Shown piece after piece: positions 571 through 33,400 of a stretch of DNA of 64,000 nt. The notes below the pieces were generated by a model. That model was not told the DNA's origin. It saw only the letters and a program-made list of their open reading frames with translations, and searched no databases. A program made the position numbers and the translations under genes. Origin of the DNA: Podarcis muralis (Eukaryota); contig NC_135661.1 of the NCBI RefSeq assembly GCF_964188315.1, positions 45,632,001 through 45,696,000 on the forward strand, in the 5' to 3' direction. Each line of letters opens with the position of its first letter. Within the stretch, counting starts at the first letter, position 1.

Positions 571-3254
571 TACAGGGCTGCCATCTGTTTCTGTACTCCT
601 GTGTTGTTAAGAAACGCAAGTAACCCGGGCAGTACAAAATAAGTGTGGTGCCTGTTGAGGATTGTACCCACCGAAGATGCAGCAATTGTTTATGGCGGCT
701 TTACTTTTTCATTTGAGCAGTGTTTTACAGGGTTTCTGGCTGCTTGGCTTGCTCAGGCTTTTGCTGACTACCACTAACTGCCTGGCAATCTGTTTCTCAG
801 GATTCATTAACTTCTTTTCTCTGGTGTGTAGGAAAAAAGTATTTCTTGCTTGAGTGGGTTGATGCATTTAAGCTTGCCTAGTGCTTGGTCTTAAATGTGG
901 CTGCCTTTAGTTGTGCATAGTGTATGCCTGTGTCTTAAGACTCGGTTTCTTAGGATGATGTGTGTCTGTTGCATGTTATCCAATGACCTCTTTTTAACAA
1001 GGTGTTTGTGCAAGGGAGACCACGTTGGCTATTTTCATTTGAGAAAACTAGGTTATAGGAGATGATGGCACCAGATGGCCGCATATCCTTAGAGTGCTGT
1101 GGATTATTAAAGGGTTTGTCATGCTCTTATCCTTTTTTCCTCCCTCCCGATACTGTCAAGTGCCCATTGCTTAAGATCTGTCATGAGTTGTGTCATCTAA
1201 GAGCAGGGGTGGGCCTAATTTCAAAAGCTCTCTGGAAGAGATCAGATCTCTGGCAAGAGTGATCCTATAGGAGAAAAGAAGAAGGAGTGGCAGAAATTAA
1301 AAAGCCCAACTCTACCATGTGTGCCTGGACGGATTATTCCCAAGCGAATGCAACTTTCAACAGAAAACAGGTTCCCCATTCCTGTTTTAGAGGCTGTACA
1401 GTTCAGGACCTCAACACACCCTGGTCTGACTTAAGAACTCCTAGGTACCCATACTTTCCTGTTAGATGTTGGTAGGCCCATCATCAATGGCACAAGAATC
1501 TATTGGAAGGTGTACTGGCAATTCTTCTCAATGTCTTATTCATCTTGCTATGTATACAGCTGATCCCAGAGTTTTGGTGAGGAAGGCTTATAATTGTGGA
1601 AGGGAAAAACCTCTACATTGCTGTCCCTGTCGAAAGCCTGGAGCAATCATCATCATAAGATGATAGAATTGTGCTTCTTCTAGGCTGGGAGATGCCTGTT
1701 GTTGCACAGGCAGTCCTGATTCATCTAGCCGATCAGCTCCTGATCCCAGTTTTATTCTTCTTGTTCAGGAATTAGAAGCATGTCCTTGGAAGCCTGCCCT
1801 AAGGTCATTGTTGTTGGGGGCTGACACTGTGAGGCCAGAAGTACTGTGATATAATTCTTTCCAGCCCAGATTACATCTGAAAGAATTTTTAAGCTGAACA
1901 TTAAAACAAGCAATACTTCTGAGTATGGGGATGGGTCAGAGAGGGGCAGTGGTAGTTTCTACTTTTTTCTCTTAAGAGGCCCAGATAAAGGATAAAGTAT
2001 TCAAGCTTCTCCTGCTATTAGTGCTGGCTACAGGGAAAATATTGTCCTAGTTCACACAGGAGCCTGTAAACAAGGCTCTGGGTGACTGTAGCAGCAACTA
2101 AGGATTCCAACAGCTACTACAGCCAGTTGCAGAGAGCCCCCCTCAGTCCTGTCTCATTGTGGCTGCTCACCCTTCCTGTGGCAGTAATGCTTGCTTTCTT
2201 GCTTCTGCTGGTCCAAGAGGGTGAAGGAAGTAATTGCTTGCTGCAATTTATTGGGAATCCAGTAGCGCTATTTTTATTTTTGCTTCTTTGAATTCTTTGC
2301 TTGGAAACCTTTAAGGTGCATCACAGACAGAAGTCACCTGGATCCCCAACTCTTTAATGGATCTCCTCATCTCAGATCAAAATACCACATACCCACTCCA
2401 GATGTCTGCCCTTGCCATGAGAAGAGCTTATGAGGAAGTGTGGGCCATTTCTTTTGACTTGGGGTTTTGGACTAACACCCCTAAACTGCACTAAAATGCA
2501 AATGTCAGCACAGTTTGCAGTGCCCATTTTGTCACCTACGTTGAAAAGGCCGACAGCCGTATGCCTAGCTCTGATTTGTGATTGAGATGAACATTCTAGA
2601 TAATTTTCTTTTTGTGAGTAAAGTTCAGATTTTAATTTATCTTATATTAGGTTGCTGGTCAGCCCATCACGTGCACAGTAGCTATGTATTGAAATGGCCT
2701 CTATGATTTATTTATTTTTAAGCATGGAGAGTAACTGCTTGCTTGGCGCTGAAAGCTCCTTATGGACCAAGAACCTTTGGTCATGTTTTTAAGCTAGATG
2801 AGTGGTTCAGATTTTATTTAATCTTTCTTAATGTAAGATTAAAAACAAGATTAGAAAGTTCTGGTGGCAAGACCAGCTCCTTGGAAGCTTATTGCAGGAT
2901 TAGAAGTGTATTTCTTCTTGCTATCCAGAAAGCTCCCTTGTGCTACAACAGACATTAACTCATTTGTCTCACTGTGGAAGATTATAATCCACTTTCCAGT
3001 AAAGTAACCCTAGCATTTAGTTCACAGCAGGGCTTAGTGATGAATCGAACTGCCTCCTCAAGAAATCCGAGAGAGTGTGGCATTACAAAAGTTTCCTTCC
3101 TCACAAGCTTTCACTCTATACTAGGCTGTGGTTCTGTCTGCACTACAGACTTGGTGTTGCACAATAAAGCCTTTAATACTGAGCCAAAGGAAATAGACAT
3201 GTTTCACAACAGCATACAATTAAACTATGGGATTCACTCCAACAAAGGCAGTGA

Positions 3255-3630
3255 TGGCCACCAACTTGGATAGCTCCAAAAGAGGATTAGACAAATACGC
3301 AGAGGATAAGGCTACCAATGGCTACTAACCACAATGGCTTTGTTGGGGGACAGTATGCTTCTGAATTCCAGTTGCTAGAAACTGCAGGAGGGGAGAATAT
3401 TCTTGTGCTGAGGTCATTCATGTAGGCTTCCCATTGGCATCTGATTGGCCACTGTAACAGAGGCGGTTTTAGGGTAACGAGACTGGTGCAGCCACACTGG
3501 GTACCATGCTGGAGGGGGCACCACAACAATGTTGTAGAGCAGAGCATGAGAGGCAGGGTGCCACTGAAATTGGAGAGCCCAATTAGATGGCCTGTTGGTA
3601 TGATCCAGCAGGCTCTTCTTTTGTTCTTAC
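3255..3630 (+). mobile_element. Decayed CR1-type LINE 3' end
   Basis: gatggccaccaacttggatagctccaaaagaggattagacaaa...gaggataaggctaccaatggctact resembles the CR1 ORF2 end/3'UTR; a related piece is at ~24140-24230. Confidence 0.5.
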
Positions 3631-6170: not shown

Positions 6171-7947
6171 AGAACAGCAAGAGTCTTGATCCAGGTTGGG
6201 ACTTTGGTTGGGGGAGGATTACCTTAACATTTTATCCATCACTGTTTTGTGTTGAAAATCCCTCACACACCCCTCAGAATCTGCTATTTACTGTTTTGAT
6301 TTATTTATTTTTTAAGTGGCAGAGAATCCCAATCATAGGGCTTCAAAGATGTGGTGAATATCATGTATACTTTGACCCTCTTTGGGCAAGTTACTTTAAG
6401 GCTCAATTTCTATTAATCTGAAAGGGAGAAGTGAAAGATTATACTGTAAAAATGATTTCTCCCCTACCCCCCCCCACTTCCATTGATGTCGTTCTTCCAT
6501 CAAAGTTCAACCCTGCTGATGTGGTACTGTGAAATGGATCAGCTTTGTCAGGAACTTGACAAAGAAGCTGGTAAACTCATCTTGGCTATAACCTCAGCAG
6601 GATATACTCTTTTTTTCCTTTTTTCTTCAGGAGGGTAGCTTAATTAAATCAAGCCAAAGATACATACAGTACAGCAGGTGAAACCTGCAGCAGCATAAAC
6701 AGATCAATAAACCGATTTGTGTTTGCTGACCAGAAGAGATTTCTAATTACTAGTGCTCTGTACTCCCCATTTCTGATGGCGTGGGAGTAATTGAAAGCAT
6801 AAGAAATCCAATTCCCTCTTGTTTGGGAGTTTGTTTCTGTTTAGCTCCACTTAACTGGACTGGTAATGCTGACTCGTCTGTCGAGGCTGAAGGTGGTAAT
6901 TTATTTCCAGTTGTCTACTTGGGATCCTAGTTCCTTATTCAAGAGTTGCTTAAATTTTTTAGTAGGAGTTTATTTTTAGAGGTTTCAATACACTGTGCAC
7001 TAGCACATTAAAGTATATATATGTGTGTGTATTTATTTATATCTGCCTAAAAGTACACATGTGCCCCAGACTTCCTGCTTCCTGTATCAAAAAGAGAACG
7101 AAAGCTAAATAATAAATAAATAACTGTAAGCAGCACCGAAGGGGAAATTATCCTCCAATTTGTGAACCTATGGAAATACTGTATATTCTGTATTGTTGTA
7201 TAATATCTAGGATTTATTGCATGGAGAATCAAATAATATTATTATTACTGTTGTTTTTTTTGTTGTTATTTAATCTACCGTATATGCTGCTTACATGCCA
7301 AAATGGCTTCTAAGTGGTTTGCAACTATAAAATCAGAATCAAAATACACAATAACATTAAAAGATCCATAATTAAAATATACAATAAAACAAACAATTAA
7401 AAAAGCATAATGAAAACAGTGAAAACCCATTTCAGGAGATATGGGAGATAATCCAGCAAGATTCTTAATTTGGTGTTCACACACACCAAAACTGATTTTT
7501 AAAACTATTGATGTAGCATGTTTAGAACTTTTCTGAAGTTCTGTCAGAGTGCAAATACTGAAAACCCAAGTATTAGTAAATGCCTTTTGACTTTTCACAC
7601 AAAACTTAATTAAGAGATGTAGCAGTATGGTTGCTCATTAATCATACGTTTGCTGCCCCTGTAGTTCTGCTGCCCTGAAATCCATTAGTCTCCAGCCATG
7701 TACCTGCCAATGTACATCAGCATCTGTGGCTTCTTACACTGCTCTGGGTGAAGGAATAACAAGGGCAAGGCAAGTGATGTGGTTCCTTCCACTTGCCAGA
7801 GCAAGTGTGGTAGGAATGCACACTTATTTAAAACAAGACTGCTTGCACATTGTCACTCTTACTCCAATGTGGGATGGTCTGTTTGTTACCAACATTAGAA
7901 TTAATGCTTTCTTCTCTCCCCGCCCCCTGTTTCTTTATCATTTTCAG

Positions 7948-8265
7948 CCATGGCCCAGCGTGTCCAATCTTGCTAAGGATTTCATTGACCGTCTGCTCAC
8001 AGTGGATCCTAGTGACCGGATGACAGCTCTTCAAGCCTTAAAGCACCCCTGGGTGGTCAGCATGGCTGCCTCTTCTTCCATGAAGAACCTGCACCGCTCC
8101 ATATCTCAGAACCTCCTCAAGAGGGCATCATCTCGTTGCCAAAGCACCAAGTCAGCCCAGTCCACCCGCTCCAGCCGCTCCACTAAATCCAATAAGTCCC
8201 GGCGGGTACGGGAGCGGGAACTGCGAGAGCTGAACTTGCGCTACCAGCAGCAGTACAATGGCTGA
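7948..8265 (+). CDS. PSKH1: Terminal coding exon of serine/threonine kinase PSKH1 (upstream exons lie before the window; 1-7947 is intron)
   Basis: Acceptor ttttcag|CCA at 7947/7948; reads [78 protein letters not shown]...[16 protein letters not shown], matching the kinase C-lobe and tail of PSKH1. Confidence 0.95.
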
Positions 8266-11200
8266 CAACTCAGCAGGAGGCTGCCTGGCTTGTTCTTTCT
8301 TTGTCATTGGGACATGTTCTGCACTGCGTTCACTAAGTGAGGGGGCCCCAAACTCCAGCCCTCTTCTCTCCAAGCCCAACTTCCTATGTCCATCTTCCTG
8401 CCTTGGGAGATGGAGCTTTAGGGATGCTGCTGCCCCTGGGAGCACATCTCACCTGTGTAGGGTCAGGGGATTAGAAAATCCTGCTTCTTGGCCCAGCCCT
8501 GGAAAAAAAGTCTACAGTTAGTTGCCTGAAATACTGGAGCCACGCAGAAGAGTCCTTCCCTAGCCAAGAATCTTTGCTACTCCTATTTATTGACTCCCAA
8601 GTTTTATCTAGCCAGCCTCTGTTGCTACAGGGTCTGGGAGGGGATGATTTAGGCCAGGGTAGCTAACATGGTACCACCCAAATGTTGTACTACAGCTCGT
8701 CATCTCTGTTGACTGGCCATGCTGACTGGGGCTTATGGGAGTTGGAGTCCAGCAAAAACTGAAAGGCACCACATTGGCTATTGCCGACTTAGGCTGTTGG
8801 TTAAAATCAGGATCATGGAACCCCATGGGTCCACAGGTGCAGAAGGAGATTACTGAGTTCCTCTTCTGGCTGCAGCCTTTTGCACTGCATCAGACATTGC
8901 CCCAGAAGTTTTTGTGACATCAGTTGGGGGTTTTCTGCACCCAAGAGAGGGGGAAGGGGAGCCTATAAGTCCCAGTGCATGTGTGCAACACCTTGCACAG
9001 CTCTCTGAATCTTGGGCTATGCACTTTCACAGTTTCAGTTTTCACTTGGTTTTGCACTTAAATGGCTGCTTTCCATCCATACAGCTGTGAAATGGGGACC
9101 AAATTCTCCTTTGATACTTGTTGGAGGAAATCAGAATTAGTGCTGCTCCTCTCACTGTCCTGTGTGTTGAAGGCCGGAGAAATGGTTGTGCCTTAACTAC
9201 ACTAATTTTGGCTGGGAATGGCTTTTCCTCCCACTATTTTGGAGCCTTATCTTGCTCTCTGTTGTATCTTTCCACTTAACGCTGGAATGAATTATAGGAA
9301 ACCCGGTCATCATTCTGACTCAATCAGTGCTTAGATGTGTGACTCAGTACTGCAACATTGCAAGTGACTGAGGAGACATCAGACAGCTTTCTTCCCTCTT
9401 CTGACCTCCTGTACACACACCAGGGGGGGTCTCTCATCACAGGGGTGACATCAAAAGTCTGTTTCTCTCATTAAAGGCTTGAGTGGGTTCAAACAACTGC
9501 TGTGCTTGCCTCTACAGCTGGCACACTGGGGTGCAGGCAATGCAGCTTAGAATCATAAAATCACATAGCTTAAAGGGACCCAAAGATAATCTACGCTGCA
9601 TGCCCCCCCCCCCCCGGATTAACCCACTTTCCCTTGGTTTTAGTGTGCTGCAAATAAAGAGCCAGAGAGCAAATCAGGTGCTCACACCAGAGCTGCCTCT
9701 TGAATTAAGTAATATGAAAAAAATCTAGACAGCAAGCTTGGTGCTTATTACAGCAGCAAATTGCCAGAGTCAGTAGCCAGTCTGAGCAGAGAGACAACGT
9801 GTTTCTGTAGGGATTTTCTGTCTCCAGTTAGACTTTTATCTAAAAGTGCAGCAAAATGATGTAATGAGGTACCAGAGTCCTGAAATAATAGGATGGCCTG
9901 GGGGTGGGATAAATTTATTCGGGATATAGGAGCAAGTCTTGTTGTTCTGGCCTTTCATTCACCCCAGTAGATAAGGTCAAGAAAAAAGGGCAGCTATTGG
10001 AGTTTCCAACCTTAAATCAATATTTCTCTGTCCTGTTCATGATTGGCATTGTGCCCTCACATCAGCTGCTCTGTTTCACAGAAACCAGCTACTTCCAGCC
10101 TCTGGTGGCACATCCTGTTTCTGAGAGCAACTCTCTTGTGCTGGTTAATGTGTCAGGATACATTGTCAGACATCAGCTTAAGGACATTGCGTCAGTCATG
10201 GTAGGCAGGTGGCCATATCATTTTGGGCAGTTAAATTTTATTGACGTCTACAAAGGCACTTCCTGTCCCAATGAACAGTGACTCAGTGGAGGTGTTAAGA
10301 GTAAAGGTGTACAAAGTGTCTGGGAGTGATACCATTGCAGTGGGGTAGCCCTTGGGTGCTCCCAAGTGTGCATTTCCCCATGACAGAGAGGGAGGGAGTG
10401 ATGGTGCTACAGTAGCTGTGATGTTGAATCGCTCATTAGTAAGGATGTGAGTCTGCCTTGTCCTCACCTTGTTGAGACATCAGCATTACATAGGAAAAGT
10501 AATGTAACACACAGCTTGTGTGCTTAAGAAGCTTTAATCCACTACAGTGGGATTGATTCATGTCCATGTGTTCCTGCAGTAGTTCTAGAGGTACATTATG
10601 CAGAACCAGTTTCTCAGCCCAGGGTGACATCTAGTGGTCCAACATACTCTCTCTGTCAGTAACCAGGCTCCTATTGATGCTTGGCTTTTATCTCATACAG
10701 TGGTTTCACTTAGGTTACTTTGCAGTTGGAGATGCACCTGCTATTTATGTGTCACCAGTGAGTATTGCCCACTACTGCTGGCACACTGTGCTTTCCATTG
10801 ACTTTTGTGGTGTGTATGTGACTGCTTCAGGAGACACCCCAGCATGGGTGGTAGCGGTAAAGGTCTCTGCCTTGTCTCTCTATTTCCAGTTTTCTATTCT
10901 GGATAGGACACCAATTTCATAGAGGGTTATTCCTTTAGACTCACTCACACTTTCCCCCACAGTTATTTCTGTTACGCGATGGGGAAATTGCCAAATGTGA
11001 GGTGCCTATGTTCAATAGCCCTGGCAGTGAGAAATTTCTGTGTTAAGGAATTATTAAGTTTGTAGGTCAAAAGAAAATGACAGCATGACCTCACTGTTGT
11101 TCCGTCCTGGATTGCAGAACTCCTAGGCCATGCTTTTGCTTCTCCTGCTCAGAGTTCATGCCAGTGAACTGGATTCATTGTGTGCATTTGCTTAAAAACA

Positions 11201-12381
11201 AAAAGCAACAAGGTGGCAACACTTGGGTACTGAATTGTCTCTAGATGTTGACGTTGGTCTCTATCTTATACCACCCCTTCCCTCCCTGTTGGAACAGTAA
11301 ATATTGTAAATATATTGGAACTTAGCAATACTGTGTGAAAAACAAACCAACCCATACAGCATCTCGGATCTAGTGGTGCAAAACCCACCTATCCACTGTG
11401 GAATGGGATAAGGTCAATGATTGCCACTTCAGAGAATGCCTGCTTCAGATTATGTGACGTTTTTGTTGATAAGAGAGGACTCACCCCAGAGACATAACTG
11501 GGAATGGGGATAGGGGTATCATGGACAAGAGGCAGCTTCTAACTGGGTTGTGCCATTTGAAATGTCTCACGTTTTTGAGCCTGGAGATTCTTCATGATTA
11601 CTTCCTCCTACTGGTTTCCAAGTACTCCGTGTACAGGAGTTTCCCTTCTGTATCAGCAGATTCTTCATGATGACTTCCTCCTACTGGTTTCCAAAATCCC
11701 CCTTGCCCCTTTGGATAGTACCTTGAAGTGTCATTGTGCCTTAACACCAGCCAGCAGGGATAAGGAGGTGTATTCTGCTGGGACAAAGGGCCTTGGGGTA
11801 GTTTAATCAGAAAGGGGAGAGGCTAGCATCTGCTATGTCTCTTCTCTTAGTGTTGGGAAAGTTAGTTTCTGTTGCAATAAAGGCCATTAATTCCTAGTGC
11901 TTTGAAGTCCCCCACTCCATATGGGACCAAGCCCACACTCACAGTGGATAGAGGCTTCCTTGCCCTCATAGCCTTACTAAGCAAACTCTGATGGCCAGCT
12001 GTAACAATCTGGAAGAGCTGGGTCTTCCAAAGGAACCTTTTGGCTTGGTCCTTCTAAGCTACGGTGCTTCTGTTTTGAGGTGCATTGGGATGCTTCCAAA
12101 TGGAGTTTTTTCCTTTTCTTTTTCTGGACTCATGTATGCTCCTACATGAGTGGGATTCAAGAGGTCCTTAGGCTTACAAAACCATTTCCACATGCATGTC
12201 AGATGGTGTTCCCTCCATCTTCAACTTTTCCTGTGTCTTCCACTCCTTGTACAGCATTGAAGACTATCCCCAAGAATTTTGGGGAGTAGTTTGTTGAGCC
12301 AGCACAGAGGTCTTCAGTCATAAAGGAGAGCCTCCCAAAGTTCGCACGATAATTCATTGCATGGTCATTTTGGGTCCTAGG

Positions 12382-12616
12382 CAGTGCTCTTTTTTTTCCT
12401 TAAAAAATGTTTGGGGGTATTCTCATTCTGTCTGAGACTCAGGAAACACCATGACAGGAAATGAGGCCACTATCAGGGGTAGCAACGGAACTGACGATTC
12501 ACCGTGCTAGAGAAGAAACTAAAAAAATATTATTATTTTTAGTTCCTTCTCCCGTTTGATTCACAAAATGTTTAGGAGTATGCATACCCGTACATCCCCC
12601 CAGAAAAAAACCACTG
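12382..12616. mobile_element. hAT-type MITE
   Basis: TIRs CAGTGCTCTTTTTTT ... AAAAAAACCACTG; flanks gtcctagg / gtcctggc resemble an 8-bp TSD; same family at 26289-26436. Confidence 0.6.
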
Positions 12617-15430
12617 GTCCTGGCCATGGAGCATGCCTGAAACTGGTAAGCCAGATGGAAGATATGCCAACCCTGTGATGATACCAGGTTGGGGAGACAG
12701 CAACATGTGTAATGCAGCCACTTTGAGGGTTTTTTCCCTACAATTGAGTGATATATAAATTTTATGAAATAATAATGGAGTTGCTACAGATAGCACAATC
12801 TGCAGGAATAAATCCCCCCCCCCCCATTCCACGTCCTCCTTTCTTCCTTCTCTGATGCTGTGGAGCAGTTTTAAACCCCCATCTGGAAGCTCCCTTGGTC
12901 TTTATTTCTGATGTGCTGATTACTTTATTCATCTTTTGAAGAGTTATATGGTCCCTTTCTTAGAGTGCAGATGCCACTGCTACTGAAATATACTGTGACT
13001 GAAGCACAGACTTCTGCATGAGCTGTCCTTTGTCCTCATCTAATTCCTACCTTATAAGGAAAGAAGTCTGATGGGGAAGTCCCTGATGTGATGGCATGTG
13101 AGGGAGATAGTGAAGGCAACATGGCACTTTTTAGCTGCCATAATGTGTATTTTGGCCCTCAGCTAACCAGACAGACAGCTGAACCTGCCATTACATGAAT
13201 CTCTGGTTTGGTGGCCAAGCAGTGGCCTGGGATGCCCTGGCTGAGGCTGCATTCTTCTCTGACACACACCAACACCAAAAGTATGGGATTGTCTTCATTG
13301 CAGTTGAGTGAAACGTGTTTGTGAACCATGTTGTTTAATCCAAATATGAATGAGACAGCTGAGATGGTCCTCTGAAAATCTGTCAGTAGCAAATGCCCGG
13401 GGGAGCACTAGAAAAAGGTGTGTGTGGAGAGAGGAAGGAAGGAGGGGGGCTCGGTTGCATCATTCTGCCTATGCAGCTTTTCCATGTCTTTTGAAAAGTT
13501 GCCTGTTCTGAATGACTTATACAATTTTCATGCTGCATTTGCCAACCAGTGCCTTATTTATCTAAAGCAATCAGTCTCTGCCCTCAGAAATCCAGGGTTC
13601 ACTTGCAGCCCTGAGTCAAGATCCAAAGAACTGCACAATTAGTAATGCACATCAACTAGTCTTCCATGTTTGTGTTTGTTGTACTTCTGTTTCCCCCTTT
13701 CCCCCATGCTCTGCTACAGACAGTTTTTGAACTTGGGAGTCTGCTATGACACAAGGGCCTCCGGTTCAAAGGGAGGAGCAATAAAATAAAAAACTCTCCC
13801 ACTGGGCACTTTCTAGCCTGGCACTGTTCTGTGGATCTCAGCTGTAGCATTTGTCCCCCACTAACAGAGACATAGCAAAGAATGTGAAGTGCATTAATTG
13901 ACTGAGGGTGGCTATCCGAAATAACCAGGTTTCTGGTTGGGCAGCCCCTGTGTTGAAAAATCCATTTGTCTCTGCTTTTCCATCACTCGGTCTTCTCTTC
14001 TGCTTCATCTTTGCTCGTCTGCCTCTGTGGCATGTAATGAAAGGTTGTTTATAAAGTTGGGGATTTCAAGCTTTCCACTTGCAGTGTACATTCTAGCCCA
14101 ACTCGTCTGCAAAGGAACCCTTCCCTGCTTGCCCACCAGAGAACCCCAGCACACTGCAGAGGATTCTGGGGCTTGTAGGGCATGCCCTGAGCAATGGCTG
14201 CTGGTTAGGCCTTGTTGGGTGTTGCCATTTAACCTGTACTAAAGTAGAATGCCTTAGAACACAACACACCTACTACTGGCTATGCATTGCTGGGAAAGAT
14301 TGGTAGTGACGGGCAAGCTGCCTATTGGGAAAGCTCGTTTGCCGCTACTGATTTTTCTCACTAATAAGTATTCAAAGAACCTCTGGGTTCTTGGAGTACA
14401 GTTTGAAAACCACTGTTTTAAATAAACAAGGCTGCAGTTCTATAGCCACTTACCTGGGAGTCAGCACCATTGAACTCAGTGGGACTTATTTCTGAGTAGA
14501 CATGCACAGGACTGCACTGTGTAAGACACACTGTCTCTGGCTAGTAGCAGGCTACTTTCCAAGCCGCCTGCGGTCTGGTGGCCTTTGGACTGGGGGGCGC
14601 CACCTCTTGGCCTCCACCTGCCCTTCTCTTCTCCCCTGTCCTGTGAATGGTTCACTTTTGACCCTGCAGTGCTTCTTGGAAGTCCTCCACTGCAGGTCTT
14701 AAGGACCTCGCTTTCACATTTCAGACATTCTCCCCCACCCCCTGCTCATCACACTCAAGTTGCCAAAAAAGATTGTTCCTAATCTCTCTCCCTGTTCTCC
14801 ATGGGACAGTGAGATTTTACTTTTTGTCTCAAGTATTCATGTCTGTGATTTTTGCCTTAGGTGCCTCTTTTATTTTTTACACTATGGAATCTCTACTTTT
14901 TTAGAGTGTGATTTGATACATGGCAATTAACCTGTAATGTTGAAATTAGTGTATAGAATTATTTATTTTGTGTATTCAGTCTGTTTTTAAATTTGTAAAA
15001 GTATTCTGTTTATTCAGTAAAGTGTTGATCCTCACTTAGTGGTCAGTGTATTTCATTTGGGGTGTGTGGTGTGGTGACTGCTTTATTGAATACATTGTCA
15101 ATGTCGTCATATTGGTTCCTTTATGTGCATTTTAGTGGATGCTCAGGCATGCTTTATGAAGGGAGCCCTCTCAGGATAGCAAACGTTCCTAATCTTTCCT
15201 CTGCTTTTCTTCTACCTGCATCTGTTTGATATTTCTCTTGGGATATCAATTACTTGCTGAGCACAGGATGGAGTACTGTATGTGCCCCCCCCCCCGGATG
15301 GAGACTGGAGCAAAGTGGTTTGTATGATGTGTATTTCAAAGGTATTTTTAATGACAATGAAAGACTGGAGAGTTATTATTACTATTATTATTTATTAAAT
15401 TGGTTAGCTTCCCAGCGGCATCTACCTAAC

Positions 15431-16444
15431 TCATTGTTGAAAATGGAACCTTGGTTCAATCCAGCAGAAATCACATGAGCTTTCCACTCCCCAGTAGAGT
15501 TCCAATACACAGCCACAAACTGAAAGTGTGAGGAGTTATGCCTGAGAAAATAGATGTTGTAATCCAAGTTTTCTTGTGTCCTCATCACATTTGCATGTGA
15601 ATCTATACCACCAGAGTTCAGACTGTTGTATTCTGTATCTGCACATGGAGGCAATTGGGATCTTCGTAGATGCTGTGTGGCGTGAGAAGCTAAGCTACAT
15701 GGATGGGTGCTTCATCTGAAAAAAAATGCTTAACACATGCTTTTGGAGAAAGATACTTTCAGCATAGTGCTTCCTCAGTATATCAGACTCTCTTTGAGTT
15801 AGCACTCTTACCTGGCAGGAGGAGGCGCCAGTCCCTGCAGCATATAGATCATAGATGTGGTGATACGGTTGCCCCAGTATTGCTGGCACTAGCTTACTGT
15901 CACCAGGGGTAGGTCCACCTGCTGTAGATTGGCAGCTGAGCCACTTGCTACTGAAACAAATCAACCTCAGGTAGGGAAAGGCTAGGCAAAGTGGTGCCTG
16001 GTGCCCATTCAGACTGATAGGGTGGAGGGCAGGAAGACTCAACCATAGGTGGAGCCAGAGCTAATGGCAAGGAGAGACAACTAACTTTGGCTTTGTCCAT
16101 ATTCTCCTGCCTGCTGAATTCTACAAGAACAACACAAAGAGTGCCATCCACTCTTATGTAGGGTGGGGCTCACCCCCCCCCCATTTTATTCATGTTGGCA
16201 CCCCTGGAAGCAGGGCCATTCCACTGGCTCTGCTGCAATACAAGCTCCCTCAGGCACCTTTCTCAACTGTGACCTGACTGCAGCTGCTTATCTTGTCTCT
16301 CCATCAGTCACTACCCAAGGAGAGGAAGGAAGCAGAAACCACGGGTGGTACAGACCTGATTTGGTGATAGGTACACTGGCATTACTCACCACAGATAGTG
16401 CCAAGCAGGTCTAGGTAGGCAGCAGCTGTCCACAGGAAAGCCAT
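15431..16444 (-). pseudogene. CTRL: Chymotrypsin-like protease (CTRL) pseudogene: exon 1 (16444-16390), exon 6 (15947-15812), probable decayed exon 7 (~15541-15431); exons 2-5 not recognisable
   Basis: Exon 1: ATG...MAFLWTAAAYLDLLGTICG|gtgagt, a chymotrypsinogen-type signal peptide (human CTRB1 MAFLWLLSCWALLGTTFG). Exon 6: tag|..SGSAANLQQVDLPLVTVS*CQQYWGNRITTSMI[+2 nt]YAAGTGASSCQ|gtaag versus human CTRL [38 protein letters not shown]; TAG at 15891-15889 and a 2-nt frameshift. Position tail-to-tail with PSKH1 matches CTRL synteny. Confidence 0.85.
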
Positions 16445-17388
16445 TTCAGTTAGTGCCCCAAGGGAACATCAGATCTCCTGGTACCCCTCATTCTATATGG
16501 GCTCCTCATCTGCACTAAGCAGCTTATTGGCAGCTGCACTTCTCTGTGTGTCCTTGAGCTGATAATAGCAGAAGGCCCAATTTAGCCTTGTGTTAGGTGC
16601 AGGTGCTGGACCAAAACACTTCCTCACCAGGACCCACAAAGCCTCCAACAGTATCTGTTCCCCATAACTTTCTCTTTATGAATGAGAAACACAACATTCA
16701 GAATTAGGTGTGTGGTTTTTAATTCCCGTGCTTATTGGCTCAGCTATAGAACTATCTGAATAAAAGTGGTGTTCTGTGCTCCACACATGTCCAAGTGGTG
16801 AGAGCTTGCCAGCACTGGGAAGAGAGATTGATTATTAAAACACTTTTAAGACTGCAGTTAAGTGAAAAGAAAGGGTTCTAACAAGTCAGTACCCTTAACA
16901 AATGACAGTTCCCAGGAGTTTTTGCTGAGAGCCATGGCTGTTAAGTGATATATCACTGCTTTAAATGTAAGGTGAAGGTGTAGCCAAAGGTGTCACTCCA
17001 AAGCAGCTCTTTTCACCCTAAAAAGCCATTGCATGTAATAGTGCAGTGCGACCACGACCAGGACATCAAAGCATACTGTAGTTCCTTCTCAACACTTTAG
17101 CAATTGAGTGTAATAGGCATGCATTCTCTGTTGGCGTGTGACTTGGAATAACAGAGTTTTTCCATATTTGTCTATTGCAAAACAGTTGGGAAGTCCTAGT
17201 TTGAGCAAAAGAGAGAGAAAAGAGGAAGCCACTTCAAAAGAAATGTTGGGTTCTTACCATTTTTGAAAATGTGGTAATTTATGTACAAACTGCATCAGTT
17301 TCAGTCATTTCCCTTTTGCACTAGAGCTCTACTTACACTCGTTCTCCGACACCTATTTGCAAAGGCTGAGCTCTGCAGGAGGCACAGG

Positions 17389-18387
17389 ATGGCTCTTCTC
17401 AACATCACAGACACACACTCGAGCAGCACGGTGGAAGAGGTGTCATGGGTAAAAGCCAGCTTGCTTCCAAGCCTCTTCCTTGGGGCTTGCTTCCTGGTTG
17501 GCATGCCTGGGAATTGTCTTGTAGTCTGGACGGTTCTTACTAAGTTCCCCCAGCGTTCCTTCACCATTATGCTCATCTTGAACTTGGCCTTGGCTGACTT
17601 AATGGTCATGTTGACAGCACCATTCTGGATCTACTATTTTCTCAACAGCTGGGTCTTTGGAAATGTCATGTGCAGACTTCTCCTCTACCTTGTCTACTTA
17701 ACTGTGTATGCCAGCATCTTCTTCATCACCCTGATGAGCCTGCACCGCTTTGCTGTTGTGGTCTTTCCATTCACTTCCCAAATGTGGCGGAGGCAACGTG
17801 TGATGTGCAGGACTTTGCTGGCCGTTTGGTTGCTGGCAGGTGTGTTTGCATGCCCAACTTTGATATCTGCATCAAGCCTGAACAAGGTTGGAGAGTGTAC
17901 AGATGAAATATATTTCTCAGATGAGCATCGCCTTGTGGTCAACATTCTGGAGACCTTATTTGCCTTCATCATCCCGTTTTCTATTCTCTCCATCTGCTAC
18001 TCCTGCATGATGAGAAGGATTCGGACACTGAGACGCTGCAAGGAAATGAAAACTGGGAAGCTGGTTGCAGCTGTGGTGGGTGCCTTCTTTGTGTGCTGTC
18101 TTCCTTACCACATCTTAAATCTCGTCATAATCTCTGCATTGTTGCTGAAATATGCTCAGCCGGAGAAGGCAAAGGCCTTGCTAGAGACAGCTGAAGCTCT
18201 AACAAACCTTCATGGGTCTGTAGCTTTTTTAAGCAGCTGCCTGAACCCCATCCTCTATGCTTTTGCTGCCCGGAGCTTCCGTGGGGGACTACGAGAGACC
18301 AATTTTGCCAAGTTATTTGCCAAAATGCATGAAGACACAGAGGAGAAATCTTCTAAGGACAATACTGTTTCAATGCAGGTTCTGTAA
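17389..18387 (+). CDS. Leukotriene B4 receptor-like class A GPCR, copy 1 (single coding exon, 332 aa; in-frame upstream ATG at 17281 would give 368 aa)
   Basis: 7 hydrophobic segments; GMPGNCLVVW, LNLALADLMVMLTAPF, YASIFFITLMSLHRF, YFSDEHR, LPYHILNL, AFLSSCLNPILYA, NFAKLF parallel BLT1 motifs (GLPGNSFVVW, LNLALADLAVLLTAPF, MYASVLLITAMSLDR, YPSEGHR, WLPYHVVNL, AFLSSSVNPVLYA, FVAKLL). N-glycosylation sequon NIT near the start. Confidence 0.9.
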   Translation: MALLNITDTHSSSTVEEVSWVKASLLPSLFLGACFLVGMPGNCLVVWTVLTKFPQRSFTIMLILNLALADLMVMLTAPFWIYYFLNSWVFGNVMCRLLLYLVYLTVYASIFFITLMSLHRFAVVVFPFTSQMWRRQRVMCRTLLAVWLLAGVFACPTLISASSLNKVGECTDEIYFSDEHRLVVNILETLFAFIIPFSILSICYSCMMRRIRTLRRCKEMKTGKLVAAVVGAFFVCCLPYHILNLVIISALLLKYAQPEKAKALLETAEALTNLHGSVAFLSSCLNPILYAFAARSFRGGLRETNFAKLFAKMHEDTEEKSSKDNTVSMQVL

Positions 18388-28440: not shown

Positions 28441-30445
28441 TGACTATAATTTAAAGCAACACATCAGCTCTATTTTCTTCTTGACAGCCCTTAAGGAATT
28501 TGAAGACAACTATCATGTCACCCTGTCATCTTTTATTCTCCAATCTAAACGCGCTTATCTCCTTCAAACATTTCTTATAGGATTTGGTTTCCAGATCCCT
28601 CACCATACTGGTCATGTACCAGTGGTGAAAGGAGAAAGGGGTCGACCAAGGATGGAGCTTTCATTTTGCTGCATTCTATTGTTTTTGGAGTGGCATTGTT
28701 CTGTGAAGTTCACATGGTGCACATGGAACATGGCAGGCAATTGTGGTTAGCTGGGGTTAAGGGAAATGCACTCTGTAGATGCTCAGAGGCAAACCTTTAT
28801 TTCTTATTATTTCTCATGAATCTGGTAGTGGTAAATCCCTGAAGAGCAGGTGTTGTGAGCAGGTAGCTGGTGAAATCCTTTGCTTGAAAAAGGCCCCATG
28901 AGAAAGTGTGTTTTTGAGAAAAGAAATGCAAGTTTATATTTTATACCTGTTAAAGGAGGGGAAAGAACATCACTTCCTGTTGTAGTTTTCAAAATGTGTG
29001 GCTTGTGGTGGGGGGAAGAACTTCTGTTTTTCTCTGCAGGGACAGCAGAAATGATTTCTAGATGTGTACTTAACAGATTTTGAAATGAATTGTTTTGCAT
29101 CCACACTTACGCCACTATGTAACCAGCCCTTACACCAGGGTTGGGTTGGGTAACCATATGTACTACCTTACAGAGGACAGTCCTCTATTTGAAGAAAGCC
29201 TCTATCTCTGTCCTTGCAGGGGACTAGAGATGGGCGAATCTGTTAATTTTGGTTTCCCCCAGTTTTGCATTCCAGTCTTAAGTTCAGTTGTCCACATTTC
29301 CACATCAGTTTTGCAAGTTAGAAAGATAAAAAAGGTTCTCATGAAAATTCACCAGCATTTTAGTGTGAATTTCTCTTGCATGAAGTTTTGCCAATTTTTT
29401 TGCAAAGCAATTTCCCCTAATATATTGCACTTTGGTATGCTATTTTCACCAACATGCAAAGAGATGGCGGCTTATCTCTTCCTTTCCTGATTGGCCAGGA
29501 GTTTAGGGCCCAAGATATGCTGGAGTGGTTGGTTCCCATTGCACTAGGAAAAAAAAAAGGATAAGCCTGTCTTCCCTAAGTGCCGTGTTCACCATAAGGG
29601 CTACATGCCTTTAATTTAGAAAAGAAAAACTGAATGCTATTTATCTAGAAAACATTATCTAGCAAGCATATTCGGTTCTTAAGCATGAATTGATAAATAT
29701 GTTGCTCTTGTGCTCCATGATTGTGCCCCATGATTTGCATAGTTCTAGGATAAAGCACATTACGCTGTCTGCATAATTTGTAATGACAATGCAATAAGCA
29801 GTGCTCTTTTGGGAGTAGAGGCCAGTACTGGCTTTGGTGCCATTTGCCAATCATATTAATCTTTTCTAAATGCTACAAGAGATGGGCTTCAGTGTACTAG
29901 TTGGTCTGCACAAGTGTTACACTCATATACTGTGTAGAATTCATAAGTGGGTTTGGGTGTGGATGTGATCTGAGCATATATTAACACCCAAAACCACACA
30001 ACCCACAGAAAACTAGTGCAACTGGTGCGTAATAGACAACCATTCCTGCGTATACTCTTGCATAGAATATAGAGCAGGTGTGGAGAGCCTTTGGCCCGGC
30101 AGATGCTGCTGAACTCCCAACAGTCATAGCAAACATGGCCACTGGCTAGGGATGATGGAAATTGTAGTTCAGCAACACCTGGAGGGCCAAAGGTTCCTCA
30201 CACATGGTAAGGAGACTGCATGTGGCTGTGCATGGCTGTGAATATGGGAGAGAGAACATAAAACTGACTAAATTTAGCCCCGCCCCCACAAAATGGCACC
30301 ATGTGTTTTGGATTGCTGGAATGTAAAAAACAACCCACCACCAACAGGCTCAATCCCCACTCAAGTTCCATCTTCCCAGGTCACCAGCTACCGTCCTGGC
30401 AAAGTTAGCAATGCAGCTGTAGACGTATCAGCATCTGTGGACGTA

Positions 30446-33400
30446 TCAGGCACATTTGGACTTCCCAAGGCAGAAGGGTGGCTCCGGAGCTGGAACAAAA
30501 ATGTTGCTAAAAACTGGGCGATAGTTCTCAGGCAGTACTTGAGGATTCTGCACCATGATCTCCAGCACGTTGTTGTGGATTTCTTTAGAGATGTCGCCAC
30601 GCAAGTGGAGGAGCATGGAAACGTGGTCTTCGCTGGTGAAACAACAGGCACAAAACGTGTTACCTCTCCCTTGGCCTCCTGCTGCCAACCAGGACTGGCC
30701 CTACCTTTAGAAAGAGTGAGGCAGCCACTCCACAAGGGGATGCTAGTGGGTGGAGAGTTGGAGAAGAGAGCTGTATGTTCTCCATTGTGGCCTACCCTCC
30801 AAACCCTTAGCTAGGCTGCTGTTCTCAGGTACACTGGAGGAAAGGTACCTGATACCAGTGCTGAAGGAAGATTGCTTTGGTGGAAATGGCCTTGTGGGCC
30901 AACGTGGACCCCCTGGCAGGCCAAGATTAGACTGCAGGTTGGAGAGTTATTACCCTTGCGTTATTGCTGGGGCGACTGCCAGAAAATGTTTTCGGCCTTG
31001 AATTTGGAGAACGGAAGGGATGCCTAAGGCCTCAGATCCAAGACCTGGCATCTCCAAGCAAAAGAATTCCAGCTCTCACAGTGCTGGAAAAGAACAATGA
31101 TTCTCTCTGTGTTGTATTTCCTGTGCTTCCTGTTTAGGGGCAAAATGCAAATCCTGTGCTTGGGGAAGCAGTGGTGGAAGATGGGAAAGTGTATTTGCTT
31201 TGAGTGCCCTACCTGATATCAGGATATTTTGTCACAAATCCCAGTACTTCCAGGCTCAGCATGGAGGGGTCCTTGAGACTGACGAGCTCCTGCAGGTCAG
31301 CAATCACTCTGAGAGTCTGTTCATTCTCCTCCAGGCCCTGGGAAAGGAAGCAGGAGACAAACTATACTATACCAGGAGGACAGAGCGGATGGACCGATGT
31401 GGAGGCTGCAAGATGAGTTATGATTGTCGAGTGACTATTACTACTGTTAGCAGTTGCAGTTATACTGCATGTGGGTTTTGCATTTTTATATATTGATTTT
31501 TGTTGAGATGGGTAAACCTCTCGGAGATTTTTAAAAAATAAATATAACATGGTATACAAGTTCAATAGATAAAGAATACCGTATCATACTGTACCATAAT
31601 AAAAATAAATAAAAAATTATCTAGTAGCATCTTATAGACCAACTAAGTTTGTTCTGGTATAAGCTTTTGTGTGCATGCAAGCTTCTTCAGATACCTGCAC
31701 CCAAAAGCTTATACCAGAACAAACTTAGTTGGTCTATAAGGTGCTGCTAGACAATTTTTTATTTTTTTTATTTCTACTGCATCAGAGCAACACAGCTACC
31801 TACCTGATATTGTACCATAGACATTAAAGCAGAGAGCAGCCCAGTCATCACTAGACCAGTGTTTCCCAACCTTGTGCCTCCAGCTGTTTTTGAACTACAA
31901 CTCCCATCATCCCTGACTAGCAAGACCAGTGGCAAGGGATGATGGAAATTGTAGTCCAAAAACAGCTGGAGGCACAAGGTTGGGAAACAGTTTCCCAACC
32001 TTGTGCCTCCAGCTGTTTTTGGACTACAATTCCCATCATCCCTTGCCACTGGTCTTGCTAGTCAGGGATGATGGGAGTTGTAGTTCAAAAACAGCTGGAG
32101 GCACAAGGTTGGGAAACACTGCACTAGACTACCTTCCACAGCATCCTTGAACGAAGTTCAACTAGGGAACAGCTAGCAGCTGTTGGCAGAGCCAGCCTCA
32201 TGACCAGGTGTTCTGCACAGTTGTTTATTCCCCAACCCCAACCCCAACCTGGCTTGGGTTGCCACCTCCTGACCAAAAGGATGATTGCCTGATGTGACTT
32301 TTTCATGCAGGTACTGAAATGCAAAGACACCTCAGGAGTAAGCAGCAACTCTAGCTTGGTATTATCGGCCAGACTTGCTAGGCAACAAAGTTGATCTCCC
32401 AACAGTTCGGCCCTAGGAGAAACCTGCACAGGTTTCTTTGGAAGCTGGAAGTCGTGCAACTAGATGCTAGGGATGTTGAAAATTTTGCTCAGTTCACATT
32501 TTAAGTGAATTTATTCCATTCTTACTTCCCAGACTAATACAGGAACTGGAATGCAGTTATCCTTCAGTTGTTGAACATCTTAAAATTTTGCAATATAGTT
32601 CATGGCTCAAAAATATAAAAAATGTGTACTTCAGGTCAAACTGCATATGAATTTCCCCCCAGTTTAAAACAAACAAATAGCTGATTGATGTGAAAATAGG
32701 AAATAACTAACTTTTGAATGAACACGTGCAAAACTGACACAATCTGGAAATAGAATGACCCATTCATCCCTATTGGATGCATATTTGATCTTTGCTGGCC
32801 ACGCACACAACTCTGTATTCAGCTTGGTGAGCAAAGTCAATCTCCCTTTCCTCTGTGATCACCAGCAGCTGCCAGCCCCATCCTTGGAACGTGTCTGGCA
32901 AAACATGATAGCTGTTAGCTGTTCCTTTCTCTCACCAGGCTGCAAAAGAGCTCCGTCAGCTGAGAGGCGTCTTGCACCATCTGCCTGGCCGTCCGGCTTC
33001 TCTCCTCAGCGTTCCGGCAGACTAGCCTTTTCTGCAAGAGAGCCCTCACGTACTGGCTCATGACCAAGCGCTCAGTCTCTGACAGGAGGTGCTGGACATC
33101 AAGGGGGGAAAATTGCCATGGTCATTCTAGTTAATGGGAGCTGCACTGAGACAAAAGGCAGAAACGCAGTGTGTGTGTGTTTCCTGCAGTGGTGGCTGGT
33201 GTCCACTGGGCCTGGTAGGGCAGGAGGCAGGGAGGTCAATAGTAGGAGCCAGAGCCAATGGCAGGCAGAGATAACTAATTCTAGGTTTGTCCCCATCTTG
33301 CTGGTGATGGGTGGCGCTGAAGCTGGCAATGGGCATGGCCAGAGCAAAAAGTGGGAAGGACCTCCCTTTGACACACACTCTCTCTCTTTCTCTCTCCCCT

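What the first reader, a model, noticed from the sequence alone, without database searches (positions are those of the whole stretch)
15431..16444. Hidden unprocessed pseudogene of the pancreatic protease CTRL, invisible in the ORF track
Seen: on the minus strand an intact signal-peptide exon (MAFLWTAAAYLDLLGTICG, GT donor) and a 136-nt exon with intact splice sites that reads LQQVDLPLVTVS*CQQYWGNRITTSMI/YAAGTGASSCQ, carrying a TAG, a 2-nt insertion and a Cys to Tyr change. Only 442 nt separate exon 1 and exon 6. Established: chymotrypsinogen exons 2-5 need about 444 coding nt plus introns and carry the catalytic His and Asp; LPLVTV..QYWG and SSCQ fit CTRL better than CTRB; CTRL lies tail-to-tail with PSKH1 in human. 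Inference: the syntenic CTRL was lost here by internal deletion plus point lesions; a weak WLCIG..WG..WI(N)Q trace at ~15541-15431 may be exon 7, with the GDSGGP serine motif gone. This may be an undescribed digestive-enzyme gene loss in this lizard lineage.
Basis: partly seen in the sequence, partly recalled or inferred. Interest (0 to 1): 0.8.

Follow-up and report, generated by a model that had tools for sequence, protein, structure and literature searches.

The report
Dead CTRL chymotrypsin gene in lacertids
This wall lizard keeps only two broken pieces (exon 1 and exon 6) of the pancreatic digestive enzyme gene CTRL at its ancestral position, and the sand lizard Lacerta agilis has the same wreck, so the gene died before the two lineages split; this is a clean but unsurprising gene loss.

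Summary
On the minus strand lie a 55-nt signal-peptide exon (16444-16390, GT donor) and a 136-nt exon-6 block (15947-15812) with an in-frame TAG, a 2-nt insertion and a Cys-to-Tyr change, 442 nt apart.

- **Identity.** Exon 6 is 80% identical to Anolis CTRL but about 50% to chymotrypsin A/B types. It matches bovine chymotrypsinogen at E=2e-6.
- **Position.** In Tiliqua and Python an intact 7-exon CTRL (55/104/80/82/181/134/162 nt) occupies this slot, between a CAMK-family kinase (PSKH1-like) and an LTB4R1-like receptor.
- **Missing parts.** Exons 2-5 and 7, carrying His57, Asp102 and Ser195, leave no trace anywhere in the 64 kb. A surviving piece of intron 3 shows at least two internal deletions, and a third removed exon 7. 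The proposed exon-7 trace is indistinguishable from background.
- **Not an artefact.** Lacerta agilis, an independent assembly, shares the junction, the TAG and the insertion.
- **No other copy seen.** No lacertid CTRL protein appears among database hits, although both lacertid proteomes are present.

Verdict: a genuine unprocessed unitary CTRL pseudogene in Lacertidae, not found in the searched literature. CTRL loss is already known in vampire bats. The scan had not noted it elsewhere.

The parts
16390..16444 (-). CTRL exon 1 relic (55 nt): ATG, signal peptide, ends in phase 1. It carries a lineage-specific Ala-to-Asp change in the hydrophobic core (YLDLL, where Lacerta, Anolis, Python and Rhineura have YLALL).
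   Evidence: DNA is 76-78% identical to exon 1 and its flanks in Tiliqua and Python. Exon length comes from the Python gene map.
15948..16389 (-). 442-nt 'fusion intron' with an intact GT donor and AG acceptor. It is a mosaic: 16389-16290 is the head of intron 1; 16282-16206 is a surviving piece of intron 3; about 16125-15990 is a dispersed repeat; 15981-15948 is the tail of intron 5.
   Evidence: Intron 1 head is 78% identical to Rhineura L003 8410-8311. The intron 3 piece aligns to Rhineura intron 3 with score 65 against a shuffle mean of 19 and sd 2.3, 794 nt before exon 4. Repeat copies lie at 33188-33292 and 41983-42120. The Tiliqua alignment runs 37 nt into intron 5.
15812..15947 (-). 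CTRL exon 6 relic: 136 nt, which is 134 plus a 2-nt insertion. It enters in phase 1.
15889..15891 (-). In-frame TAG where CTRL orthologues have Gln (CAG), one codon before Cys168 in chymotrypsin numbering.
   Evidence: Residue position comes from the PDB alignment. The same TAG is present in Lacerta agilis.
15842..15846 (-). TATAT: a Tyr codon in place of Cys182 (partner of Cys168) plus 2 extra nucleotides that shift the frame.
   Evidence: The identical sequence is present in Lacerta agilis.
15044..15811 (-). Interval where intron 6, exon 7 (GDSGGP, Ser195) and the 3' flank should lie. It is 768 nt here, against 1507 nt in Python and 2065 nt in Tiliqua. No exon 7 is detectable, so it was deleted.
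15431..15541 (-). It is not distinguishable from background.
   Evidence: DNA tiles rank 135-268 of 1064. The exon-7 profile scores 0.7 bits, rank about 1000. No tblastn hit at E<5.
14761..15043 (.). Context: a conserved non-coding element that anchors collinearity. It lies 655-838 nt beyond the CTRL stop codon in Tiliqua and Python.
   Evidence: 84% identity over 288 nt to Tiliqua and 88% over 220 nt to Python. No Rfam match.
7939..8265 (+). Context: last coding exon of the CAMK-family kinase (412-aa product; PSKH1-like, name not verified here), tail-to-tail with the CTRL relic.
   Evidence: Pkinase C-terminal match, CaMK hits in the PDB, gene calls.
17281..18387 (+). Context: LTB4R1-like GPCR, head-to-head with the CTRL relic. 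It was used as the anchor to fetch orthologous loci.
   Evidence: 7tm_1 at E=2e-48; named orthologues; gene calls.

Best explanation
This is an unprocessed unitary pseudogene: the original CTRL (chymotrypsin-like protease) gene of lacertid lizards, decayed at its ancestral position between a PSKH1-like kinase and an LTB4R1-like receptor.

Of the seven ancestral exons only exon 1 and exon 6 remain. At least two deletions removed exons 2-3 and exons 4-5, and with them His57 and Asp102. A further deletion removed exon 7 with Ser195. The surviving exon 6 carries a CAG-to-TAG nonsense change, a 2-nt insertion and the loss of Cys182.

No protease can be made. Because Lacerta agilis carries the identical structure and lesions, inactivation predates the split between the window's Podarcis-type species and Lacerta.

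Shown: the anatomy, the orthology, the shared lesions, and the absence of the other exons from the window. Inferred: that no working copy exists elsewhere, that other chymotrypsins (CTRB, CTRC) cover the function, and the order of the lesions.
For: - Exon 1 and exon 6 are present with the stated lesions.
- There is significant chymotrypsin homology: E=2e-6 against the PDB, E=9e-12 against Anolis CTRL, 31.2 bits against a CTRL profile.
- The relic is CTRL-type and not A/B-type.
- Tiliqua and Python have the gene order GPCR, CTRL, kinase, with 7 exons of 55/104/80/82/181/134/162 nt.
- The flank is collinear with both species all the way to the kinase.
- Exons 2-5 and 7 are not found in the window by tblastx, tblastn, DNA tiles or profile searches.
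- A piece of intron 3 is retained.
- Lacerta agilis is 92.6% identical across the region and has the same junction, TAG and insertion.
- Divergence from L. agilis in the relic exons (2.9-3.6%) matches that of the intron (3.2%), so nothing suggests constraint on the exons themselves.
- No gene is called here in either lacertid assembly.
- No lacertid CTRL appears among the best 120 hits of two CTRL queries, although the L. agilis and P. muralis proteomes are in the database.
Against: - The rest of the genome could not be searched, so a relocated functional copy is excluded only through annotated proteomes.
- Only two lacertid genera were compared.
- In the nearest outgroup, Rhineura, only exons 1-4 were seen to be uninterrupted. 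Its annotated product is a short 227 aa, so the age of the loss is bracketed loosely.
- Exon 1, both splice sites and about 300 nt of promoter are still well preserved, which leaves room for residual transcription.
Confidence: 0.9

Rival explanations
1. Dead duplicate: the relic is real, but a functional CTRL copy survives elsewhere in lacertid genomes, so there is no loss of function.
For: Only 64 kb of this genome was examined. The protein searches list only the best 120 cluster representatives.
Against: - The relic occupies the ancestral orthologous slot, so any other copy would have to be a derived duplicate.
- A lacertid CTRL would be at least about 75% identical to Tiliqua and would rank in the top ten. 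None appears, although L. agilis (NCBI) and P. muralis (UniRef) proteins are in the same database.
Confidence: 0.06
2. Assembly artefact or rare haplotype: exons 2-5 and 7 exist in the animal but were collapsed out of this assembly.
For: None found.
Against: - The independent Lacerta agilis assembly (GCA_009819535.1) has the same exon 1 to exon 6 junction, the same TAG and the same 2-nt insertion. It differs only by substitutions, small indels and a 312-bp SINE-like insertion.
- The window has no N runs.
Confidence: 0.02
3. Residual function: the preserved promoter, exon 1 donor and exon 6 acceptor still yield a spliced transcript. Introns 1 and 5 are both phase 1, so exon 1 joins exon 6 in frame. 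That would encode a 38-residue signal-peptide-bearing product ending at the TAG, or act as a non-coding RNA. This reading is not exclusive of the pseudogene reading.
For: - The splice sites are intact.
- The phases were derived from Python.
- The promoter and exon 1 region is 76% identical to Rhineura over 465 nt.
- The relic exons and intron diverge less from L. agilis (about 3%) than the flanks do (about 6%).
Against: - The exons are no more conserved than the intron between them.
- The signal peptide has gained an Asp in its hydrophobic core.
- There is no terminal exon or identifiable poly(A) site.
- The promoter conservation may belong to the GPCR 840 bp away.
Confidence: 0.05
4. Chance resemblance, or a fragment of a different S1 protease and not CTRL.
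For: The separate short pieces alone gave no Pfam or PDB hit.
Against: - Those pieces are only 11-20 real residues, too short for the filters.
- Joined with X at the breaks they reach E=2e-6.
- DNA-level alignments to Tiliqua and Python exon 6 reach E=6e-38 and E=1e-28.
- Synteny is exact.
Confidence: 0.01

Closest known systems
CTRL (chymotrypsin-like protease CTRL-1) of other squamates, e.g. Tiliqua scincoides, Python bivittatus, Anolis sagrei
   Same: - Same genomic slot and orientation.
- Orthologous exon 1 and exon 6.
- Exon 6 is 35/44 identical to Anolis.
- Same exon length (134 nt) and the same intron phases.
   Different: Five of the seven exons are gone, the whole catalytic triad is missing, and exon 6 carries a nonsense change and a frameshift. 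The relic cannot encode an enzyme.
CTRL loss in the common vampire bat (Blumer et al. 2022, PMC8956264)
   Same: A lineage-specific inactivation of the same minor pancreatic chymotrypsin, found as a broken gene at the conserved locus.
   Different: - A different clade (squamates, not bats).
- No extreme diet that would explain it.
- Much heavier erosion, by large deletions and not only point lesions.
- Shared by at least two genera.
Chymotrypsinogen A/B (CTRB-type), e.g. bovine chymotrypsinogen A, rat chymotrypsin B
   Same: The same S1 fold family and the same seven-exon gene family. The exon 6 region aligns to residues 154-191.
   Different: Identity is only about 47-56% against 77-80% to CTRL, and these genes sit at a different locus. 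The relic is not a CTRB copy.
Other unitary pseudogenes noted in this genome
   Same: The same kind of event: a single-copy gene decayed at its ancestral position in lacertids.
   Different: It is a different gene and pathway, and that note's claims were not re-tested here.

Membership tests
CTRL orthologue (S1 serine protease, chymotrypsin subfamily) | Sequence homology to the S1 chymotrypsin domain | tested here: met
   Met for exon 6 only: PDB chymotrypsinogen A at E=2e-6, CTRL profile 31.2 bits, and tblastn E=9e-12.
CTRL orthologue (S1 serine protease, chymotrypsin subfamily) | Closer to CTRL than to CTRB, CTRC or elastase | tested here: met
   Identity is 35/44 to Anolis CTRL and 34/44 to Python and turtle CTRL, against 19-24 of 36-43 to A/B-like sequences. 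Elastase scores E=0.05. No formal tree was built because the fragment is too short.
CTRL orthologue (S1 serine protease, chymotrypsin subfamily) | Conserved position between the PSKH1-like kinase (tail-to-tail) and the LTB4R1-like GPCR | tested here: met
   The gene order is the same in Tiliqua and Python. Rhineura and Elgaria carry CTRL exons 1-4 beside the orthologous GPCR. Flanking blocks are collinear.
CTRL orthologue (S1 serine protease, chymotrypsin subfamily) | Catalytic triad His57, Asp102, Ser195 and an open reading frame of about 264 aa | tested here: not met
   Exons 3, 5 and 7, which carry the triad, are absent from the whole window. Exon 6 has a TAG and a frameshift. It is therefore a relic of the gene and not a functional member.
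Unprocessed unitary pseudogene (gene loss) | Retains intron/exon structure at the ancestral locus (not a retrocopy) | tested here: met
   GT and AG sites are present, and pieces of introns 1, 3 and 5 lie between the exons.
Unprocessed unitary pseudogene (gene loss) | Disabling lesions are real and inherited (shared with a related species) | tested here: met
   Lacerta agilis has the same junction, TAG and 2-nt insertion.
Unprocessed unitary pseudogene (gene loss) | No functional paralogue of the same gene elsewhere in the genome | tested here: inconclusive
   There is none in the 64-kb window, and no lacertid CTRL among the protein hits. The whole assembly could not be searched.
Unprocessed unitary pseudogene (gene loss) | Gene intact in outgroups | tested here: met
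   Exact spliced maps give complete ORFs in Tiliqua and Python. Named full-length CTRL exists in Anolis, geckos, snakes, turtles and birds. For the nearest outgroup, Rhineura, only exons 1-4 were seen to be intact.

The most novel reading that the evidence does not exclude
CTRL may be dispensable across squamates and may have been inactivated several times independently.

- Besides the lacertid wreck, the Elgaria assembly has TGG changed to TGA in exon 3.
- Eublepharis shows no CTRL within 10 kb of the orthologous GPCR and has no CTRL protein in the database.
- The annotated Rhineura product is only 227 aa.

If real, this would be a recurrent, diet-independent loss of a pancreatic protease thought to restrain trypsinogen activation.
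Probability: 0.3. Interest if true: 0.5.

Novelty: new member of a known kind. Interest (0 to 1): 0.4.

Why it matters
CTRL is one of four vertebrate chymotrypsinogen isozymes. It is a minor pancreatic form that degrades trypsinogen, and knockout mice are only mildly affected (as summarised in PMC8956264). Its loss has been linked to the vampire bat's extreme diet. An old, shared loss in ordinary insectivorous lacertid lizards shows that the gene can be lost without such a diet, which weakens simple diet-based explanations.

The relic also gives lacertid phylogenetics a set of shared lesions to use as markers. It tells annotators that the gap between the kinase and the GPCR in these assemblies is a real gene loss and not a missed gene. 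The erosion pattern, two exons left with a fused in-frame intron, is also a neat example of stepwise deletional decay.

Tried and rejected
- **Separate stop-free pieces (20, 25, 47 aa) against Pfam and the PDB.** No hits. The pieces are too short for the filters, so I read the block through with X at the stop and at the frameshift instead.
- **Exon-7 trace at 15541-15431.** Tested with tblastn, DNA tiling against Tiliqua and Python exon 7, and an exon-7 profile on six-frame tiles. It sits at background level, so I rejected it.
- **Search for exons 2-5 anywhere in the window.** I used tblastx with Rhineura and Elgaria exons and tblastn with 13 CTRL proteins. The best E-values were 0.25-0.65, which is chance level.
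- **Python exon 4 against 29066-29017 (minus strand).** This was an outlier, score 53 and z about 10. Rhineura and Tiliqua score only 31-33, within the shuffle range. The extra matches fall at snake-specific codons.
- **Exon-7 profile top tile at about 28.7 kb (plus strand).** It is a 17-residue VSWG..C motif. It lies in the repeated 3' flank of the GPCR duplication unit.
- I judged both of these weak hits to be chance.
- **Naming the kinase as PSKH1.** The Atlas search and the PDB show only a CAMK-family kinase, so the name stays unverified.
- **Rfam over 8200-17300.** No match.
- **Exons 5-7 of Rhineura and Elgaria.** I could not fetch them because they lie beyond the 10-kb flank of the loci.

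Full report
**What is in the sequence.**
Read on the minus strand, 16444-16390 is ATG plus 18 codons and one base (MAFLWTAAAYLDLLGTIC, then a split Gly), followed by GTGAGT.

After 442 nt comes an acceptor (tAG at 15949-15948) and a 136-nt block, 15947-15812, followed by GTAAGA. In one frame this block reads (A)SGSAANLQQVDLPLVTVS, then TAG (15891-15889), then CQQYWGNRITTSMI. After TATAT (15846-15842) the sense continues in another frame as AAGTGASSCQ.

The window has no N runs.

**Is it more than chance?**
The stop-free pieces alone are too short for Pfam or PDB searches and gave nothing. Four tests on the whole block are decisive:
- Read through with X at the stop and X at the frameshift, the 41-residue block matches bovine chymotrypsinogen A residues 154-191 at E=2e-6. 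Rat chymotrypsin B scores 8e-5 and elastase only 0.05.
- That alignment places the TAG one residue before Cys168 and the Tyr at Cys182.
- tblastn of 13 vertebrate CTRL proteins against the whole window gives 79% identity and E=9e-12 for Anolis sagrei.
- A profile built from 114 CTRL proteins scores the block 31.2 bits. Nothing else in the six reading frames scores above zero.

**Which genome, and how I obtained references.**
The neighbouring intact GPCR ORF (17281-18387) is found exactly in GCA_964188315.1, record OZ076960.1. Another GPCR ORF in the window is 98.5% identical to a Podarcis muralis protein.

Orthologues of the GPCR served as anchors to fetch the same locus from Lacerta agilis, Rhineura, Elgaria and Eublepharis. 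A Rhineura exon translated from its locus was used for the representative search. That search led to named squamate CTRL proteins and to the complete CTRL loci of Tiliqua and Python.

**Orthology.**
In Tiliqua and Python the order is LTB4R1-like GPCR, then CTRL, then a 412-416-aa CAMK-family kinase lying tail-to-tail with CTRL. Python also has EXOC3L1 (a Sec6-domain gene) beyond the GPCR. This is the same order and orientation as in the window.

An exact spliced map gives seven exons of 55/104/80/82/181/134/162 nt in Python and 52/104/80/82/185/130/162 nt in Tiliqua.
- The window's exon 1 is 55 nt.
- Its exon 6 is 134 nt plus the 2-nt insertion.
- Python exon 6 aligns base for base from 15947.

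Downstream, conserved blocks are collinear with both species all the way to the kinase's last exon. The exon-6 relic is 35/44 identical to Anolis CTRL and 34/44 to Python and turtle CTRL. It is only 19-24 of 36-43 identical to chymotrypsin A/B-like sequences. The relic is therefore the CTRL orthologue and not a CTRB copy.

**What is missing, and how it went.**
Exons 2-5 total 447 nt in Python. They carry His57 in exon 3 (TAAHC) and Asp102 in exon 5 (NNDITLL). Exon 7 carries GDSGGP with Ser195. None of these exons leaves a detectable trace in the 64 kb, whether by tblastx, tblastn, DNA tiling or profile search.

The 442-nt spacer is a mosaic of four parts:
- 16389-16290 is the head of intron 1, 78% identical to Rhineura.
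- 16282-16206 aligns to Rhineura intron 3, about 0.8 kb before exon 4. The score is 65 against a shuffle mean of 19 and sd 2.3, and Elgaria has a 17-nt core at the equivalent place.
- About 16125-15990 is a dispersed repeat with two other copies in the window.
- 15981-15948 is the tail of intron 5.

So there were at least two internal deletions, one taking exons 2-3 and one taking exons 4-5, and not a single event.

Between exon 6 and a strongly conserved element at 15043-14761 there are 768 nt. Python has 1507 nt there and Tiliqua 2065 nt. Exon 6 is still 78% identical at the DNA level to Tiliqua, so simple decay cannot explain the disappearance of the more conserved exon 7. It was deleted.

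It ranks 135-268 of 1064 DNA tiles, and about 1000th among profile tiles at 0.7 bits.

**Not an artefact, and older than this species.**
The Lacerta agilis locus is 92.6% identical and collinear over 8000-17300. A base-level alignment shows the same exon 1 to exon 6 junction, the same TAG and the same TATAT. The only large difference is a 312-bp SINE-like insertion in L. agilis at window position 16371/16372. Two independent assemblies of two genera cannot share an assembly collapse, so the lesions were inherited.

Divergence between the two species is 3.6% in exon 1, 3.2% in the spacer and 2.9% in exon 6, so the exons are not under separate constraint. The window's lineage has also put an Asp into the hydrophobic core of the signal peptide (YLDLL instead of YLALL), which fits with drift. 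Neither assembly has a gene called here.

**Is there a working copy elsewhere?**
I could not search the whole genome. There is indirect evidence. With a rattlesnake CTRL and then the intact Tiliqua CTRL as queries, the best 120 cluster representatives include CTRL from Anolis, Python, other snakes, geckos, Varanus, turtles, birds and mammals. None comes from a lacertid. L. agilis and P. muralis proteins are in the same database. A lacertid orthologue would be expected among the top ten.

**Outgroups.**
Rhineura (Amphisbaenia) has uninterrupted exons 1-4 and an annotated 227-aa Trypsin-domain product. Its exons 5-7 lie outside the fetched locus. The loss is therefore bracketed as older than the split between the window's Podarcis-type species and Lacerta, and possibly younger than the lacertid-amphisbaenian split.

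In passing:
- Elgaria exon 3 reads TGA where Trp is expected.
- The Eublepharis locus shows no CTRL at all.

These hint at other, independent losses but were not followed up.

**Mechanism and function.**
The best-supported reading is that this is inert DNA, an unprocessed unitary pseudogene. No product with a catalytic residue can be made.

One curiosity follows from the gene structure. Introns 1 and 5 are both phase 1. The preserved donor and acceptor would therefore join exon 1 to exon 6 in frame, giving a 38-residue product ending at the TAG. I have no evidence that this is made. The lack of a terminal exon and the Asp in the signal peptide argue against any role.

**Comparison with what is known.**
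CTRL loss is documented in the common vampire bat, where it was linked to the protein-rich blood diet. The same paper summarises that CTRL makes up about 10% of mouse chymotrypsinogen, degrades trypsinogen, and gives a mild knockout phenotype (PMC8956264). Other papers treat CTRL as under relaxed or positive selection in birds and river dolphins. Three full-text searches found no report of CTRL loss in lizards.

The finding is thus a new instance of a known kind of event. It is solid, but of moderate interest.

Noticed in passing
window 14761-15043: A roughly 200-280-nt A/T-rich non-coding element. It is 84% identical to Tiliqua, 88% to Python and nearly identical to Lacerta agilis, so it is better conserved than the CTRL exon-6 relic. 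In intact species it lies 0.65-0.84 kb beyond the CTRL stop codon. It has no Rfam match. It could be an enhancer or part of a long 3' UTR.
   Followed up: partly
L004 (Elgaria multicarinata) about 3250-3260, minus strand: CTRL exon 3 reads ...LINAN TGA VVTAAHC, with a stop where Trp is conserved, while exons 1, 2 and 4 look intact. This is either an independent CTRL inactivation or an assembly error.
   Followed up: partly
L005 (Eublepharis macularius), whole 21-kb locus: No CTRL exon or kinase lies within 10 kb upstream of the orthologous GPCR, and no Eublepharis CTRL protein appears among the database hits. Two other geckos, Heteronotia and Sphaerodactylus, do have CTRL.
   Followed up: partly
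L002 (Lacerta agilis) 8665-8976, corresponding to window 16371/16372: A 312-bp tRNA-SINE-like insertion is present in L. agilis but absent from the window, just inside the relic of intron 1. It could serve as a lineage marker.
   Followed up: no
window 29017-29066 (minus strand) and about 28727-28780 (plus strand): Two weak CTRL-like matches about 240 bp apart on opposite strands. One resembles Python exon 4 at the DNA level (score 53, z about 10, but only 31-33 for Rhineura and Tiliqua). The other is a VSWG..C motif (8-10 bits). The region belongs to the repeated flank of the GPCR duplication unit. I judged both to be chance, though the co-location is odd.
   Followed up: yes
window 15990-16125, 33188-33292, 41983-42120: A dispersed repeat of about 110-140 nt, 71-75% identical between copies. 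One copy sits inside the CTRL fusion intron.
   Followed up: no
P0085 against P0216 (Crotalus adamanteus and C. tigris CTRL): The annotated C. adamanteus CTRL has an N-terminal extension and a C-terminus that goes out of frame right after ...TSSMI, the same spot as the lacertid frameshift. C. tigris is intact there. This is probably an annotation or assembly problem in C. adamanteus.
   Followed up: no
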